Shown here: in pieces, positions 2,449-16,440 of the stretch
Layout of the letters: each line of letters starts with the position of its first letter
Position numbering within the stretch: position 1 is the stretch's first letter
IMG/VR virus record: IMGVR_UViG_3300040801_004034
Location: 124,001-188,000 of that record
DNA length: 64,000 nt
Strand: one strand, 5' to 3'
Made by a program: the position numbers and the translations under genes
Notes under the pieces: model-generated
The model's database searches: none
What the model was told of the DNA's origin: nothing
Seen by the model: only the letters and a program-made list of their open reading frames with translations

Positions 2449-2690
2449 AACGTCCCTAGAATCACAGGTATAGGTGCGCCAATGCAAACTATGCGGCATT
2501 GGTCAGTAATGCAATGCACCTTTGATGTAGATTTGCGAGATACGAAGTAGGTGTTGATAGCAGATAGCATAGGCTGTAAACAACACTGAGATAGTTGATC
2601 GTGTAGGAGAATTGCCTAGGAGGGATGACCATCTACAGTTCGAAAGCCGGAAGTCTTGGGTGTTAGGCTTGACAATCGGAGAGACGATAC
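2449..2690 (+). ncRNA. orphan structured RNA, family A copy 1
   Basis: GC-rich, noncoding, paired ends; motifs shared with 16292-16440. Confidence 0.5.
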
Positions 2691-2699
2691 AAATTTAAT

Positions 2700-2776
2700 G
2701 GGCGTGTAGTTCAAGTGGCAGAATACCGGATTTGCAATTCGGAGGTTTGGGATTTCGATTATCCCCACGTCCACCA
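2700..2776 (+). tRNA. tRNA-Ala(UGC)
   Basis: Cloverleaf, G3-U70, CCA. Confidence 0.9.
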
Positions 2777-2896
2777 TCTTAAAAATGATAACAGTATGGT
2801 CAGAACATAGCTATTCTAGATTAACTATGCAATGCACTTGAAGATTAGGACACTTCTTAAGTTATCGATAATGTATATCAGTCCTATACAATTTAT

Positions 2897-3014
2897 GATC
2901 GAGGTCGTTATAATCGACTCACCAAAATAATGTAGAGTACTATATGTTATTGCGGGAAATAAAAGATATGTAATGAGCTATTGCACAGGGGTGAAAATCC
3001 TCCATCGATCACCA
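2897..3014 (+). ncRNA. tRNA-like RNA with acceptor stem, T-arm and CCA but a noncanonical core
   Basis: GATCGA/TCGATC-A-CCA; T-like arm GGGG-TGAAAAT-CCTC. Confidence 0.45.
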
Positions 3015-3020
3015 TTTTAT

Positions 3021-3106
3021 GGGTACCTAAAGCTGTTCGGATACAGTAGCTTGACTGTAAATCAAGTCTCTTCGGGGGAGTGGTTCGAGTCCACAGGTAC
3101 CCACCA
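3021..3106 (+). tRNA. tRNA-Tyr(GUA)
   Basis: Loop CTGTAAA, long variable arm, CCA. Confidence 0.9.
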
Positions 3107-3110
3107 TTTA

Positions 3111-3245
3111 TACATAGTAGCTTAATTGAGTTAGATGATCAAATGAGTCTGTGAGAGGTACCCAAAATCAGATAGTTTGATCATACTGATAAAGCGGCCG
3201 GCTAATAACCGGTATCGTTGTTGGTAGAAATCCAACTATTGTATA
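3111..3245 (+). ncRNA. tRNA-Ile(AAU)-like RNA with about 60-nt hairpin inserted in the D-loop
   Basis: GCTT/AAGC D-stem split by an ATGATCAAA/TTTGATCAT hairpin; GCCGG-CTAATAA-CCGGT arm. Confidence 0.5.
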
Positions 3246-3255
3246 ACAATTTTAT

Positions 3256-3367
3256 GTCGCAATTAGTGTAACGGTTAGCACGCCACCGCAAGGTGAGGAC
3301 AGCAGTTCGATTCTGCAAAGCTTGGAGGTCCTTGAAGGAAGATCGGTTCAAATCCGATAGCGACTCA
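3256..3367 (+). ncRNA. tRNA-like RNA with GNRA-capped anticodon arm and two T-arms
   Basis: CACC-GCAA-GGTG; GCAG-TTCGATT-CTGC and ATCGG-TTCAAAT-CCGAT. Confidence 0.5.
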
Positions 3368-3374
3368 TTTTTAT

Positions 3375-3450
3375 TGTAGGGAGGGATGCTGGTATCCCCG
3401 TGAGTCTCATAAGCTCACTGACGCGGGTTCGATTCCCGCCCCCGCACCCA
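3375..3450 (+). tRNA. tRNA-CAU (Met or Ile2)
   Basis: Loop CTCATAA, CCA. Confidence 0.8.
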
Positions 3451-3558
3451 TTTTACTGAAGGTCGGCACACTGATATGCCAATGCCGTCTGCAGCGGTTA
3501 GTCAAAATTGGTCTCTAACCAGGAGTTGATAAGATCACTTCAGTAACAATTTTATAAT

Positions 3559-3634
3559 GGTCTCATGGTCCAACGGCTTAAGATATTCGACTGTCTCTCG
3601 AATGATGAGGGTTCGATTCCCTCTGGGATCGCCA
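3559..3634 (+). tRNA. tRNA-Asp(GUC)
   Basis: Loop CTGTCTC, G73, CCA. Confidence 0.9.
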
Positions 3635-3639
3635 TTTAA

Positions 3640-3716
3640 TTGACCAGAGGAGAATAGTGAAACTCGTTCGACAGTTTATCGAAAAATAGTGGGTTTGAAT
3701 CCCATTGGTTGAGCCA
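3640..3716 (+). tRNA. degenerate tRNA (Asn GUU-like)
   Basis: Cloverleaf with CCA, but loop CAGTTTA lacks U33 and purine 37. Confidence 0.45.
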
Positions 3717-3723
3717 TTTATAT

Positions 3724-3798
3724 GCCGCTATGTTGTAAAGGATGCATTTCTTCCCTGTCAAGGTTGAGGTACGAGTTCAAATCTCGTTAGTGGCGCCA
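3724..3798 (+). tRNA. tRNA-Asp(GUC), second copy
   Basis: Loop CTGTCAA, G73, CCA; weak anticodon stem. Confidence 0.75.
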
Positions 3799-3799
3799 C

Positions 3800-3916
3800 G
3801 GGTCCTTAGCTCAAATGGTTAGAGCAACCGACTCTTTCAAATTATATGATAATATTTCTATTGTATGATTTGGAATAATCGGTAGGTTGGGAGTTCGATC
3901 CTCCCAGGACCCACCA
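3800..3916 (+). tRNA. tRNA (CAU, or CUU) with 40-nt hairpin insertion in the anticodon loop
   Basis: Perfect tRNA halves; removing 3835-3874 gives ACCGA-CTCATAA-TCGGT. Confidence 0.75.
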
Positions 3917-3961
3917 TTTTCGATATGTTAGGGTACCGATAATATTTGAATAAATATTAAT

Positions 3962-14732: not shown

Positions 14733-14733
14733 T

Positions 14734-14766
14734 ATGACATAGAATAATAGATACAAACCTCCATAA
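14734..14766 (+). promoter_or_regulatory. minigene/leader ATG-ACA-TAG-...-CCT-CCA-TAA (M-T-*-NNRYKPP-stop)
   Basis: Read directly from the sequence; repeats the 9-nt start of pth2. Confidence 0.55.
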
Positions 14767-14826
14767 TCGTTAATTGTCTTGGAAACTAAACAAAAACAAT
14801 ACAATTAAAAAACAAAAGGAAACAAA

Positions 14827-15156
14827 ATGATTAACGAAAATATGAAAGAAACAGTCGAAAGACTAACAAACGATAACGCACTCGACTTTGGAAGCAAAGA
14901 AGAGTATCTAACCTGGAGAAAGAATTGGAAAGAACGATTTAATCGAACTTCTCAAATTATTCGAAAGTTGAAGAATGATCGCAAGGTCGTTCACTTCGAT
15001 CCAAATATCAAACTAACAAAGGAAGATGAGGCTTATATCAAAGACCACATCACAACTTATAGCTGGGATCGAATTGAATCTGCACAAGCAAAAGTCAGAC
15101 ATATGATTTGTGAGCTTATTGCAGCACGAGAAATCTATAAAAAGAAAATTGCTTAA
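14827..15156 (+). CDS. hypothetical protein (FGSKEEYLTWRKNWK motif)
   Basis: Intact ORF with AAGGA upstream; followed by a terminator. Confidence 0.75.
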   Translation: MINENMKETVERLTNDNALDFGSKEEYLTWRKNWKERFNRTSQIIRKLKNDRKVVHFDPNIKLTKEDEAYIKDHITTYSWDRIESAQAKVRHMICELIAAREIYKKKIA

Positions 15157-15159
15157 GAT

Positions 15160-15195
15160 AAAGGGGCTGTAGTCAATCTGCAGCCCCTTTCCTTT
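15160..15195 (+). terminator. intrinsic terminator
   Basis: AAGGGGCTG/CAGCCCCTT hairpin with T-rich tail. Confidence 0.75.
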
Positions 15196-15220
15196 ACAGG
15201 AACAATGTTATAATACGAAT

Positions 15221-15436
15221 ATGAAAACGTCATCAGTAGCAGATATTTTAGGGCTTAACGATCCGAAACCTAGAGAAGTTGAGCGTAATCGAAAAGGTAC
15301 AATGACGTATGATCATAAGACGGGTGGTTCTTTGCAAGTTTTTACAAATGAGAGTTGGAATCGAAACAAACATTATTATGTACCTAACGGTGCTCGTAGT
15401 GCAGTTAAGAACTTTAGCAAGTCAATTTGCGCCTAA
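15221..15436 (+). CDS. hypothetical protein
   Basis: ORF after the GGAAC promoter at 15199. Confidence 0.6.
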   Translation: MKTSSVADILGLNDPKPREVERNRKGTMTYDHKTGGSLQVFTNESWNRNKHYYVPNGARSAVKNFSKSICA

Positions 15437-15446
15437 ATATTTATAT

Positions 15447-15522
15447 CAGATACGCGGCCTAGTAGGCAGAGGCACCCGCCTGTGACGCGGGGGAAGTGGG
15501 TTCGAATCCCACCGATCTGACC
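15447..15522 (+). tRNA. tRNA-His(GUG), no genomic G-1, A73
   Basis: Loop CTGTGAC, CCA; bulged acceptor stem. Confidence 0.75.
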
Positions 15523-15530
15523 ATTTTATT

Positions 15531-15809
15531 TATAGGAAGTTGGCTTAGAAGCAGCCATCTTTTAAAGAGTGGGGTCCACTCTCCCTTTGTGACTTTGTAA
15601 CCTAGCCGGTCTGAACCAGGATAAGGTAGGCGAACACAAAATAACAGCACTATCGTAATGATCTGCGGTAACTGTTTGAGTTAGTTGCGGGGAGCGTTCA
15701 GAGTGAGATTCGAGTAATACGGCCGTGAAATGACACGGTTTCGAAATAGCAAAGCTCAGAAATGATAACCTTGCTATAAACCACCCCTTTGGCGTAAAAG
15801 CACACTATA
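15531..15809 (+). ncRNA. 23S rRNA H43/H44 (L11-binding domain) mimic split by a 221-nt insertion
   Basis: AGGAAGTTGGCTTAGAAGCAGCCATCTTTTAAAGAGTG...CGTAAAAGCACACT. Confidence 0.75.
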
Positions 15810-15819
15810 AAAATTTTAT

Positions 15820-15907
15820 GGAGGTATGGCGAAATTGGTAGCACGCAACGATCTTAAACGTCGTTGGTCGAAAGACCGTGAGGGTTCGAGTCCCTCTACC
15901 TCTACCA
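15820..15907 (+). tRNA. tRNA-Leu(UAA)
   Basis: Loop CTTAAAC, long variable arm, CCA. Confidence 0.9.
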
Positions 15908-15964
15908 TTTAACAATGAGCATTGTGCCTCTCACCGAAGCACAAATTTATGCTCTACTCTTTAT

Positions 15965-16066
15965 GATCCGTTGGCGAAATTGGTAAACGCGCGGCAGAGG
16001 CCGTTCATATATTAATAATACTAGTTAAACTATATGAGACTGGAGGTTCGAGTCCTTCACGGGTTA
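15965..16066 (+). ncRNA. anticodon-less tRNA-Leu-like RNA
   Basis: Leu-type D arm, CGGC-AGAG-GCCG tetraloop in place of the anticodon arm, A73. Confidence 0.6.
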
Positions 16067-16077
16067 TTTTTTTAAAT

Positions 16078-16164
16078 GCTCGAGTGGCGAAATTGGTAGC
16101 ACGCGGTATCTTCAAACGTTATTGTCCTCAGGACGTGTGGGTTCGAGTCCCACCTCGAGTACCA
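16078..16164 (+). tRNA. tRNA-Leu(CAA)
   Basis: Loop TTCAAAC, long variable arm, CCA. Confidence 0.85.
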
Positions 16165-16217
16165 TTTGAGAACTATATTTGATTCGATTAAATATTATTG
16201 TTCATTGAAATTTTTAT

Positions 16218-16289
16218 ATCGTAGTGTTGATGGTTAACAAGTTGATTCCAAACCAACTAACGAGGGTTCGATTCCTTCCTACGATGCCA
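16218..16289 (+). tRNA. tRNA-Trp(CCA)
   Basis: Loop TTCCAAA, G73, CCA; reduced D arm. Confidence 0.75.
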
Positions 16290-16291
16290 TT

Positions 16292-16440
16292 TGCTGCAGA
16301 TTATTAAATGCCTATGTAGATTTACATGGTACTGTTAACCGAAACAGAAGTAGGCCATTGGGTGCCGAATAGTACGTTAACTAGGGGATGACCGACTGAA
16401 TAAGAGGTCTTTGTGATAGACAAGATTCTATCCTGCAGCA
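16292..16440 (+). ncRNA. orphan structured RNA, family A copy 2
   Basis: TGCTGCAG/CTGCAGCA closing stem; motifs shared with 2449-2690. Confidence 0.5.

What the first reader, a model, noticed from the sequence alone, without database searches (positions are those of the whole stretch)
2449..16440. Orphan ncRNA family A: two divergent copies
2449-2690 and 16292-16440 share three ordered motifs: TGTAGATTT (2526/16315), GAAGTAGG (2544/16347) and CTAGG(A)GGGATGACC (2616/16381). The intervening helices differ and each copy has paired ends. Conserved islands with variable stems are typical of a functional structured RNA. I cannot assign it to a known family.
Basis: seen in the sequence. Interest (0 to 1): 0.6.

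Follow-up and report, generated by a model that had tools for sequence, protein, structure and literature searches.

The report
One conserved phage RNA, doubtful twin
Of two look-alike non-coding spacers in a giant phage tRNA cluster, one (16290-16449) is a conserved, folded RNA of unknown function with a counterpart in a related phage, while the other (2446-2699) shares only three short words with it and cannot be shown to be related.

Summary
Both stretches are ORF-free spacers between same-strand tRNA genes in a 40-tRNA array (with tmRNA and GOLLD) of a 221 kb T4-like marine phage. No Rfam family matches either.

As a pair they are weak. The motif chain has p about 2e-4 for this pair, but there are 351 spacer pairs. 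Ordinary local alignment gives z 1.96. nhmmer and covariance models built from copy B do not find copy A.

Copy B stands on its own. It has an 8-bp terminal stem and a folding z of -2.6. It has an orthologue in a related phage contig (L351), downstream of the same PTH2 and 109-aa gene pair. That alignment has z 8-9, against 0.3-4.6 for three other intergenic stretches compared, and six base pairs change on both sides.

In that orthologue the three "family" motifs are no better conserved than the rest of B. B's best-conserved blocks (UAACCGAAA, UACGUUA) are absent from A.

A resemblance of motifs 2 and 3 to bacterial 23S rRNA near hairpin 35 was tested with an independent model and rejected.

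Verdict: one new orphan structured RNA (B), comparable to T4's tRNA-cluster RNAs rnaC and rnaD, and a probable chance look-alike (A).

The parts
16290..16449 (+). Copy B: a conserved structured RNA element that fills the whole spacer between tRNA-Trp (16218-16289) and tRNA-Met (16450-16522)
   Evidence: No ORF and no Rfam match. MFE -42.8 kcal/mol, z -2.6. Orthologue at L351:10891-11018. Alignment z 8.4-9.1, against 0.3, 0.9 and 4.6 for three other intergenic stretches between the same two phages.
16292..16299 (+). 5' strand of B's terminal stem (UGCUGCAG)
   Evidence: Perfect 8-bp complement of 16433-16440 in the MFE and centroid folds. Not testable by covariation, because the orthologue is cut by its contig end.
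16433..16440 (+). 3' strand of B's terminal stem (CUGCAGCA)
16309..16331 (+). B hairpin a; motif 1 (16315-16323) forms its 5' strand and loop
   Evidence: helix 1 has 2 pairs changed on both sides and 2 pairs unpaired in the orthologue.
16336..16344 (+). UAACCGAAA, the best-conserved block of the B family (9/9 identical in L351); absent from copy A
   Evidence: Its UAAC can pair with GUUA in the hairpin-d loop; all 5 pairs form in both sequences and 1 is compensatory. That pairing is a candidate only.
16347..16354 (+). Motif 2 (GAAGUAGG); only the GUAGG core recurs in the orthologue (GUGUAGGG)
16354..16363 (+). B hairpin c (short)
   Evidence: helix 3 has 2 of 3 pairs changed on both sides. 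The alignment was fitted to the model.
16370..16383 (+). B hairpin d (UAGU/ACUA). Its loop belongs to the block UACGUUA (16373-16379), identical in the orthologue. Its 3' strand is the CUA of the CUAG that precedes motif 3.
   Evidence: helix 4 changes G-C to U-A (both sides) and U-A to U-G. Copy A has an analogous UAGG/CCUA hairpin at 2604-2618 (read).
16385..16393 (+). Motif 3 (GGGAUGACC); its GACC is the 5' strand of hairpin e
   Evidence: The orthologue reads GGUUGUCC. The A to U change is compensated in the partner strand.
16390..16409 (+). B hairpin e (GACC/GGUC)
   Evidence: helix 5 changes A-U to U-A; the orthologue has GUCCC/GGGAC.
16415..16432 (+). B hairpin f (GAUAGA/UCUAUC), stacked next to the terminal stem
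   Evidence: only; the orthologue is truncated here.
2446..2699 (+). Copy A: the ORF-free spacer between tRNA-Lys (2371-2445) and tRNA-Ala (2700-2776). It carries the three motifs but has no demonstrable relationship to B.
   Evidence: Folding z -0.7 to -0.8. No homologue found anywhere. Not found by R2 or R3.
2473..2520 (+). Strong local hairpin in A (GGUGCGCCAAUGC.../...GCAUUGGU...GCACC) with no counterpart in B
   Evidence: in both the MFE and centroid folds.
2526..2639 (+). A's motif-bearing core. UGUAGAU (2526-2532) can pair with AUCUACA (2633-2639), enclosing motifs 2 and 3.
   Evidence: Read from the sequence. A 7-bp complement within 254 nt is not rare by chance, and B has no equivalent closing helix.

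Best explanation
The finding joins two different things.

Copy B (16290-16449) is a genuine, selectively maintained structured RNA of about 150 nt. It is most likely transcribed as part of the polycistronic tRNA precursor, since everything from about 1.5 to 19.5 kb is on the + strand. Host tRNA-end processing would then free it. RNase P cutting at the 5' end of the downstream tRNA-Met would set its 3' boundary. Maturation of the CCA end of the upstream tRNA-Trp would set its 5' boundary. The 8-bp terminal stem and five internal hairpins would then protect it, so that it accumulates as a small stable RNA, as T4's rnaC and rnaD do in the T4 tRNA cluster. Its neighbours all concern translation (an amber-suppressor-type tRNA, a PTH2 peptidyl-tRNA hydrolase, tmRNA and 40 tRNAs). 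It most plausibly acts in trans by binding a protein involved in translation or tRNA metabolism.

Copy A (2446-2699) is another tRNA spacer. It shares three short words and one small hairpin with B. The most likely reason is chance or a very old, no longer demonstrable common origin, and it should not be counted as a second member.

What is shown: the location, the absence of coding, conservation above two of three other intergenic stretches between the same two phages, compensatory pairs, and the failure of every homology method to link A to B. What is inferred: transcription, processing, stability and trans action.
For: Array context and strand. No ORF, promoter or terminator inside either copy.

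B's fold: z -2.6 and an 8-bp terminal stem.

B's orthologue: nhmmer from B hits L351:10909-11005 at E 0.0095. The reverse search finds B as the best non-self hit in 1.3 Mb. Model R2, built from B alone, gives L351 19.8 bits at E 0.02, the top hit in 90 kb.

Synteny: the suppressor-type tRNA, PTH2 (72% aa identity) and the 109-aa protein (61% aa identity) are shared.

Conservation between the same two phages: the B element has z 9.1 and 66% identity. The neighbouring genes have 69-71% nt identity. Three other intergenic stretches have z 0.9, 4.6 and 0.3.

Structure: 93.6% of cells are paired and 6 pairs change on both sides. Only 7 of 500 shuffles reach this, and slid controls reach 26-47% paired.

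A is not linked to B. The motifs are not preferentially conserved in the orthologue.

Precedent: T4 rnaC and rnaD lie in the T4 tRNA cluster. They are described as transcribed from the tRNA region with unknown roles (PMC3014915) and were detected by Northern blot (PMC9697503).
Against: Only one orthologue of B is known, and the contig end cuts it. The covariation therefore rests on two sequences, on an alignment fitted to B's own predicted structure, and the terminal stem is untested. One predicted hairpin (b, 16332-16347) is not kept in the orthologue.

In L351 the element follows a terminator-like hairpin and a promoter-like site, not a tRNA. Release by tRNA processing is therefore not a general feature of the family.

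For A, the ordered motifs are individually unlikely (p about 2e-4). A also has a hairpin-d analogue directly before GG(AG)GGAUGACC. GUAGAU and GUAGG recur in A, B and L351. A distant relationship therefore cannot be excluded.
Confidence: 0.6

Rival explanations
1. One reading: A and B are diverged paralogues of one structured-RNA family. The three motifs, plus the small hairpin before motif 3, are its functional core, and the helices between them are free to vary.
For: The ordered motifs give p about 2e-4 for the pair, and the combined pattern matched in 0 of 100 shuffles. Both copies fill tRNA-to-tRNA spacers on the same strand. Both have a 4-bp hairpin whose 3' strand is the CUA before GG..GGAUGACC, and its fourth pair differs between them: G-C in A, U-A in B, U-G in L351. 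GUAGAU and GUAGG are present in A, B and L351.
Against: The result is not significant after allowing for 351 spacer pairs. nhmmer and the models R2 and R3 all fail to link the copies. The motifs are no better conserved in B's orthologue than the rest of B, and motif 3 is partly a co-varying helix strand that A cannot form. B's most conserved blocks are missing from A. A's fold is not better than its shuffles. No other sequence in IMG/VR or the JGI metagenomes carries the motif pairs.
Confidence: 0.2
2. Neither stretch is a functional RNA. Both are spacer or junk DNA left by tRNA-gene shuffling and homing-endonuclease traffic, and B's similarity to L351 is only residual ancestry.
For: The array is full of HNH and GIY-YIG endonuclease ORFs. 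Several other spacers fold as well as B does. One ordinary intergenic stretch (PTH2 to the 109-aa gene) also keeps some similarity, z 4.6. Only two B sequences exist.
Against: B is as conserved (66%) as the adjacent protein genes (69-71% nt), while two of three control spacers have lost all similarity. Substitutions fall so as to preserve pairs: 6 double changes and 93.6% of cells paired, against 26-47% in the slid controls. A perfect 8-bp stem joins the element's two ends.
Confidence: 0.12
3. A and B mimic, or derive from, the three-way junction of helices 33-35 in domain II of bacterial 23S rRNA (the hairpin-35 region). They would then act as decoys for a factor that recognises that rRNA domain.
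For: A metagenome scan for motif 2, gap, CTAG, GGGATGACC returned eight bacterial 23S rRNA contigs. In 23S rRNA, GAAG sits at the base of H34, GGAUGAC follows hairpin 35, and CCGAA precedes it. B reads CCGAA-hairpin-GGGGAUGACC. In A a 7-bp helix closes the segment directly after motif 3, as H33 does in rRNA (read).
Against: Model R1, built only from 73 diverse bacterial 23S H33-H35 segments, scores A and B at or below 0 bits, and they are not among the ten window hits with E up to 10. A profile HMM of the same alignment does not find them in the genome. The Rfam LSU models give nothing. In 23S rRNA the GAAG lies inside the H34 arm, which is not its position in B. The scan returned six distinct sequences, and I judge that number to be in the range chance would give; rRNA is simply very abundant in metagenomes.
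Confidence: 0.03

Closest known systems
Bacteriophage T4 small stable RNAs rnaC (species 1) and rnaD (species 2)
   Same: They are non-coding RNAs of about 120-140 nt, encoded inside the tRNA gene cluster of a T4-type myovirus, on the same strand as the tRNAs and directly abutting them. Homing-endonuclease genes lie in the same cluster (segB in T4; HNH and GIY-YIG ORFs here). Their function is unknown (PMC3014915; PMC9697503).
   Different: There is no sequence similarity to A or B: nhmmer finds nothing at E up to 100, and the only shared words are 6-7 nt. rnaC ends in a tRNA-like T-arm and acceptor, which B lacks. Expression and processing are shown for T4 but only inferred here.
GOLLD RNA (RF02032)
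   Same: It is a large structured RNA of unknown function, phage-borne and associated with tRNA genes. One copy lies 2.6 kb downstream in the same array (19025-19472, 179 bits).
   Different: A and B give no GOLLD score. They are three or more times smaller and share no motifs with it.
Bacterial 23S rRNA domain II, helices 33-35 (hairpin 35 region)
   Same: It has short identical words (GAAG.., CCGAA, a hairpin ending CUAG, GGGAUGAC) in the same order as in copy B.
   Different: A and B fail a covariance model and an HMM built from 73 bacterial 23S segments. The structural positions of the words differ. I treat the resemblance as coincidence.
tmRNA (RF00023)
   Same: A phage tmRNA lies 220 nt downstream of B (16670-17018). 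It contains similar short words (GGAGUAGGGG, GAGUAGAUUGC, UUAGGAUGAC).
   Different: The words come in a different order. These words are not over-represented in the array, and there is no tmRNA model score on A or B.

Membership tests
Any described RNA family (Rfam 15, 4227 models) | Score at or above the family's gathering threshold, or at least a low E-value | tested here: not met
   There was no hit in A or B at the gathering threshold, or at E up to 5 over 21 kb. Searched alone at E up to 10, they gave only noise: snoZ168 at 12.6 bits, CbSR1 at 11.8 and RAGATH-7 at 9.9, all far below their thresholds.
Copy-B RNA family (B plus L351:10891-11018): is copy A a member? | Detected by a sequence profile or covariance model of the family | tested here: not met
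   The nhmmer profile of B plus L351 finds only those two. R2 does not list A among 12 hits at E up to 10. R3 scores A at 0.3 bits at best, while 14 other window places score 7-16.6 bits.
Copy-B RNA family: is copy A a member? | The family's invariant blocks UAACCGAAA and the UACGUUA hairpin loop | tested here: not met
   Both blocks are identical in B and L351. Neither occurs in A, whose hairpin-d loop is AGAAUUG.
Copy-B RNA family: is copy A a member? | Hairpin e formed by the GACC of motif 3 with a downstream GGUC | tested here: not met
   The hairpin co-varies between B and L351. A has no GGUC partner downstream of motif 3.
Copy-B RNA family: is copy A a member? | A short hairpin d ending in CUA directly 5' of GG..G | tested here: met
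   A has UAGG-AGAAUUG-CCUA followed by GGAGGGAUGACC. B has UAGU-ACGUUA-ACUA followed by GGGGAUGACC. L351 has UAUU-ACGUUA-GAUA followed by GGUUGUCC. A 4-bp hairpin is weak evidence on its own.
T4-type tRNA-cluster small stable RNAs (rnaC/rnaD kind) | Non-coding, inside the phage tRNA cluster, on the same strand, bounded by tRNA genes | tested here: met
T4-type tRNA-cluster small stable RNAs (rnaC/rnaD kind) | Sequence or structure homology to rnaC or rnaD | tested here: not met
T4-type tRNA-cluster small stable RNAs (rnaC/rnaD kind) | Accumulates as a discrete processed RNA during infection | not testable with these tools
23S rRNA H33-H35 domain (homologue or mimic) | Scores on a covariance model or HMM of the domain built from diverse bacterial 23S rRNAs | tested here: not met
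   With R1, built from 73 sequences, A and B are absent from the window hits. Their best scores are -0.2 and -0.4 bits when searched alone. The HMM does not find them.

The most novel reading that the evidence does not exclude
Copy B founds a new class of trans-acting structured RNA carried in the tRNA islands of marine T4-like phages. It would work together with the island's translation toolkit (tmRNA, PTH2, suppressor-type tRNA). Copy A would be a fast-evolving paralogue that keeps only the contact nucleotides (GUAGAU, GUAGG, hairpin-GG).
Probability: 0.15. Interest if true: 0.6.

Novelty: new member of a known kind. Interest (0 to 1): 0.35.

Why it matters
Phage tRNA islands are increasingly seen as toolkits for taking over or protecting translation. 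They also hold RNAs whose roles have stayed unknown, such as T4 rnaC and rnaD (PMC3014915) and GOLLD. Copy B adds a compact candidate of about 150 nt with signs of selection on its fold. It sits next to a tmRNA, a peptidyl-tRNA hydrolase and a suppressor-type tRNA, which gives a concrete object for expression, binding and knockout tests once a host or a synthetic system is available.

There is also a methodological lesson. Ordered short shared words between spacers looked like conserved islands, yet they were not the conserved part once a true orthologue was found.

Tried and rejected
1. Rfam at three stringencies gave nothing.

2. INPHARED phages, blastn: the only hit was a tRNA-Lys.

3. Pattern scans:
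- Motif 1+2 in IMG/VR gave at least 118 chance hits, none with motif 3.
- One search used a faulty pattern (TAGG N0-1 GGGATGACC does not match copy B itself). Its two hits were in ORF-like, tRNA-free sequence.
- Motif 1+3 gave 0 hits in IMG/VR and 0 in the metagenomes.
- Motif 2+3 with A-type spacing gave 0 hits in IMG/VR.
- Motif 2+3 with B-type spacing in the metagenomes gave only 23S rRNA and unrelated sequences.

4. The 23S rRNA H33-H35 mimic idea was rejected by model R1 and by an HMM.

5. Relatives sought through other proteins:
- The 489-aa array protein had one 34% homologue, which is not in an array.
- The baseplate-hub neighbour had no syntenic array.
- The capsid gene gave 80 loci at 67-81% identity. 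None held the motifs. Besides the near-identical contig L121, only three short contigs carried 1-2 tRNAs.
- The complete relatives G001 and G002 have arrays, but no motifs and no B homologue.

6. Identical-protein look-ups returned only contigs 100% identical to the window, so they gave no diversity.

7. T4 rnaC and rnaD show no homology to A or B.

8. The similar words in the tmRNA are coincidental, because those words are not enriched in the array.

9. A small ORF or Shine-Dalgarno reading of AGGAGGGAUGACC was rejected. The spacing to AUG is 1 nt, and the ORFs would be 3 and 13 codons (read from the sequence).

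
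Full report
SETTING. The window is bases 124001-188000 of a 221 kb IMG/VR virus record rated complete. Its structural genes are T4-like: major head protein, portal, sheath stabiliser, two RNA ligases and a DNA ligase. The capsid protein is at most about 35% identical to that of any cultured phage. It is 67-81% identical to many metagenomic contigs.

Bases 1.5-19.5 kb form one of the largest tRNA islands one can expect in a phage. ARAGORN tRNAs plus a tmRNA with tag GENQLMAA (40 genes in all). Rfam adds a GOLLD RNA at 19025-19472. All are on the + strand. Interspersed are HNH and GIY-YIG homing-endonuclease ORFs and a PTH2 peptidyl-tRNA hydrolase.

The two stretches in the finding are exactly two inter-tRNA spacers. 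Copy A (2446-2699) lies between tRNA-Lys(UUU) and tRNA-Ala. Copy B (16290-16449) lies between tRNA-Trp and tRNA-Met, 220 nt upstream of the tmRNA.

OBSERVATION. All three motifs are present at the stated coordinates. GGGATGACC occurs four times in the window against 0.11 expected. The other two occurrences lie inside long ORFs (a 233-aa ORF and the DNA ligase gene). The third motif is CTAG+GA+GGGATGACC in A and CTAG+GGGATGACC in B. A joint pattern finds only these two places, and the whole genome holds no third copy even with one mismatch per motif. Neither spacer has a credible ORF, sigma-70-like promoter or intrinsic terminator.

IS THE A-B SIMILARITY MORE THAN CHANCE? For this one pair, the colinear chain of exact words (27 nt) was reached by 1 of 5000 dinucleotide shuffles. 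A gap-tolerant alignment score was reached by 1 of 1000. But the array has 27 spacers and therefore 351 pairs, so the family-wise probability is about 0.07 at best. With ordinary scoring the pair is unremarkable: it is not among the top 15 pairs and has z 1.96. Other pairs with low shuffle p-values share mostly AT-rich words, so A-B is the most interesting-looking pair, but only that. nhmmer started from either copy finds only itself in the 221 kb genome at E up to 10.

SEARCH FOR HOMOLOGUES BY MOTIF. Exact-pattern scans of 2.9 million viral contigs and 241 million metagenome records found no other sequence with motif pairs in the right arrangement. My pattern was faulty. The one productive scan (motif 2, 20-50 nt, CTAG, GGGATGACC) returned 15 stretches. 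Eight of them are bacterial 23S rRNA.

That produced a tempting idea. In 23S rRNA, GAAG sits at the base of H34, CCGAA precedes hairpin 35, and GGAUGAC follows it. B reads CCGAA-hairpin-GGGGAUGACC. In A a 7-bp helix (2526-2532 with 2633-2639) closes the segment as H33 does. I tested this independently. I collected 23S segments from diverse bacteria using an anchor outside the domain and aligned 73 of them. I then built model R1 with the covariation-supported H33/H34/H35 structure and searched.

A and B are not among the window hits. They score at or below 0 bits when searched alone, and a profile HMM also misses them. I therefore reject the rRNA-mimic reading. The scan returned six distinct sequences, which I judge to be in the range chance would give, and rRNA is simply abundant.

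A TRUE RELATIVE OF COPY B. Relatives found through the capsid, the baseplate hub and a 489-aa array protein lacked a comparable array or the motifs. Homologues of the array's PTH2 gene led to three contigs with syntenic tRNA islands. In all three, as in the window, an amber-suppressor-type tRNA(CUA) sits directly upstream of PTH2.

In one of them (L351; PTH2 72% and the next protein 61% identical) nhmmer with copy B finds an element at 10909-11005 with E 0.0095. It lies right after the 109-aa-protein homologue and runs into the contig end. The reverse search returns B as the best non-self hit. Model R2, built from B alone, ranks it first in 90 kb (19.8 bits, E 0.02).

The alignment scores z 8.4-9.1 at 66% identity. 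The flanking protein genes have 69-71% nt identity. Three ordinary intergenic stretches between the same two phages give z 0.9, 4.6 and 0.3. On the model-fitted alignment 93.6% of pair cells are standard pairs, and six pairs change on both sides, in hairpins a, c, d and e. Seven of 500 shuffles reach this, and slid controls give 26-47% paired. This leans towards B's own predicted structure and rests on two sequences, but it points the right way.

Hairpin b of the MFE fold is not kept. An alternative long-range pairing, UUAAC (16335-16339) with GUUAA (16376-16380), forms in both sequences and has one compensatory change. B's own fold has z -2.6 and a perfect 8-bp stem joining its ends. I conclude that B is a selectively maintained structured RNA.

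WHAT THE ORTHOLOGUE SAYS ABOUT THE 'FAMILY'. If the three motifs were the functional islands shared by paralogues A and B, they should be the best-conserved part of B. They are not. Motif 1 is CGTAGATAT (7/9). Motif 2 is GTGTAGGG (3-6 of 8, depending on the gap). Motif 3 is GGTTGTCC (6/9), and its GACC is the 5' strand of hairpin e, whose A to U change is compensated.

That makes 62-73% identity at motif positions, against 66% overall. The invariant blocks of the B family are UAACCGAAA (16336-16344), UACGUUA (16373-16379), GUAGAU and AGACAA. The first two are absent from A. Model R3, built from B plus its orthologue, scores A at 0.3 bits at best, while 14 other places in the window score 7-16.6 bits. 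A's fold is no better than that of its shuffles (z -0.7 to -0.8), and nothing similar to A was found anywhere.

What A does share with the B family is GUAGAU, GUAGG, and a 4-bp hairpin ending CUA just before GG. That is too little to call.

MECHANISM. For B the most likely course runs as follows. It is co-transcribed with the tRNAs and freed by the enzymes that mature its neighbours. RNase P at the 5' end of tRNA-Met would set one boundary. End maturation of the CCA-encoding tRNA-Trp would set the other. Its closed terminal stem then protects it.

This is how I recall the T4 RNAs being made, but I did not check it. [quoted passage not shown] In L351 the element instead follows a terminator-like hairpin and a promoter-like site, so it may also be transcribed on its own. 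Given its neighbours, a trans-acting, protein-binding role in translation or tRNA metabolism is the best guess, and it is inference only.

COMPARISON AND NOVELTY. In kind, B resembles T4 rnaC and rnaD: a small non-coding RNA inside a T4-type tRNA cluster with unknown function. It is not homologous to them, nor to GOLLD, tmRNA or any Rfam family. It is thus a new orphan member of a known kind, currently with two instances. I give a probability of about 0.2 that A is a real but very diverged relative.

SCORES. Interest is 0.35. It is a credible new phage ncRNA candidate in an interesting translation-related island, but it rests on thin comparative data, has no functional lead, and the headline claim of a family with two copies is not borne out.

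Noticed in passing
window 14150-14732; also L350:2336-5640, L351:9858-10345, L352:9866-10336: An amber-suppressor-type tRNA (anticodon CUA, called tRNA-Pyl by ARAGORN) sits upstream of a PTH2 peptidyl-tRNA hydrolase gene. It is directly adjacent in the window, L351 and L352, and about 2.9 kb away in L350. The arrangement is kept in all three related phage contigs, which suggests a functional pairing, or possibly stop-codon reassignment. The capsid ORF is intact under code 11, so recoding was not pursued.
   Followed up: partly
window 16670-17018 and 19025-19472: A phage-encoded tmRNA (tag GENQLMAA) and a GOLLD RNA with an embedded tRNA-like gene (19094-19167, anticodon AUA) lie at the 3' end of the tRNA island.
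   Followed up: no
window 15157-15220, 13965-14149, 3107-3374, 15908-16077: Other ORF-free spacers in the array fold much better than their shuffles (z -5.7, -3.0, -2.7, -2.8). The first looks like a strong isolated hairpin. 15908-16077 contains a T-arm-like hairpin (16041-16059). These may be further small RNAs or tRNA remnants.
   Followed up: no
window 6083-6102 and 8056-8075: A 20-nt near-repeat (GCGAAAAG, 3 nt, GTCACTTAT) occurs with identical spacing in two different spacers.
   Followed up: no
L350:251-372: In a related phage, the spacer after tRNA-Lys(UUU) has a perfect 9-bp terminal stem (AAGATGTAT/ATACATCTT), a T-arm-like hairpin (CACGGTTCAAGCCCGTG) and a GC-rich tetraloop hairpin. 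It looks like another tRNA-island RNA, reminiscent of T4 rnaC. It shows no similarity to copy A (z -1.4).
   Followed up: partly
window 3800-3913, 4620-4709, 4734-4827, 7696-7787: Unusually long tRNA calls (90-114 nt). One was found only by Rfam at the relaxed threshold and missed by ARAGORN. They may carry insertions or introns.
   Followed up: no
window 1840-2364, 3962-4636, 6932-7540, 10861-11520, 17040-17771: Five ORFs with homing-endonuclease signatures (HNH families, NUMOD3, GIY-YIG SegE-like) are scattered between the tRNA genes, as segB is in the T4 tRNA cluster.
   Followed up: partly
L215, L216, L219, L221-L224, L228 (metagenome contigs): One lineage of bacterial 23S rRNA carries GAAGTAGG and CTAGGGGATGACC exactly. 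This caused a misleading match to the motifs and was judged coincidental.
   Followed up: yes
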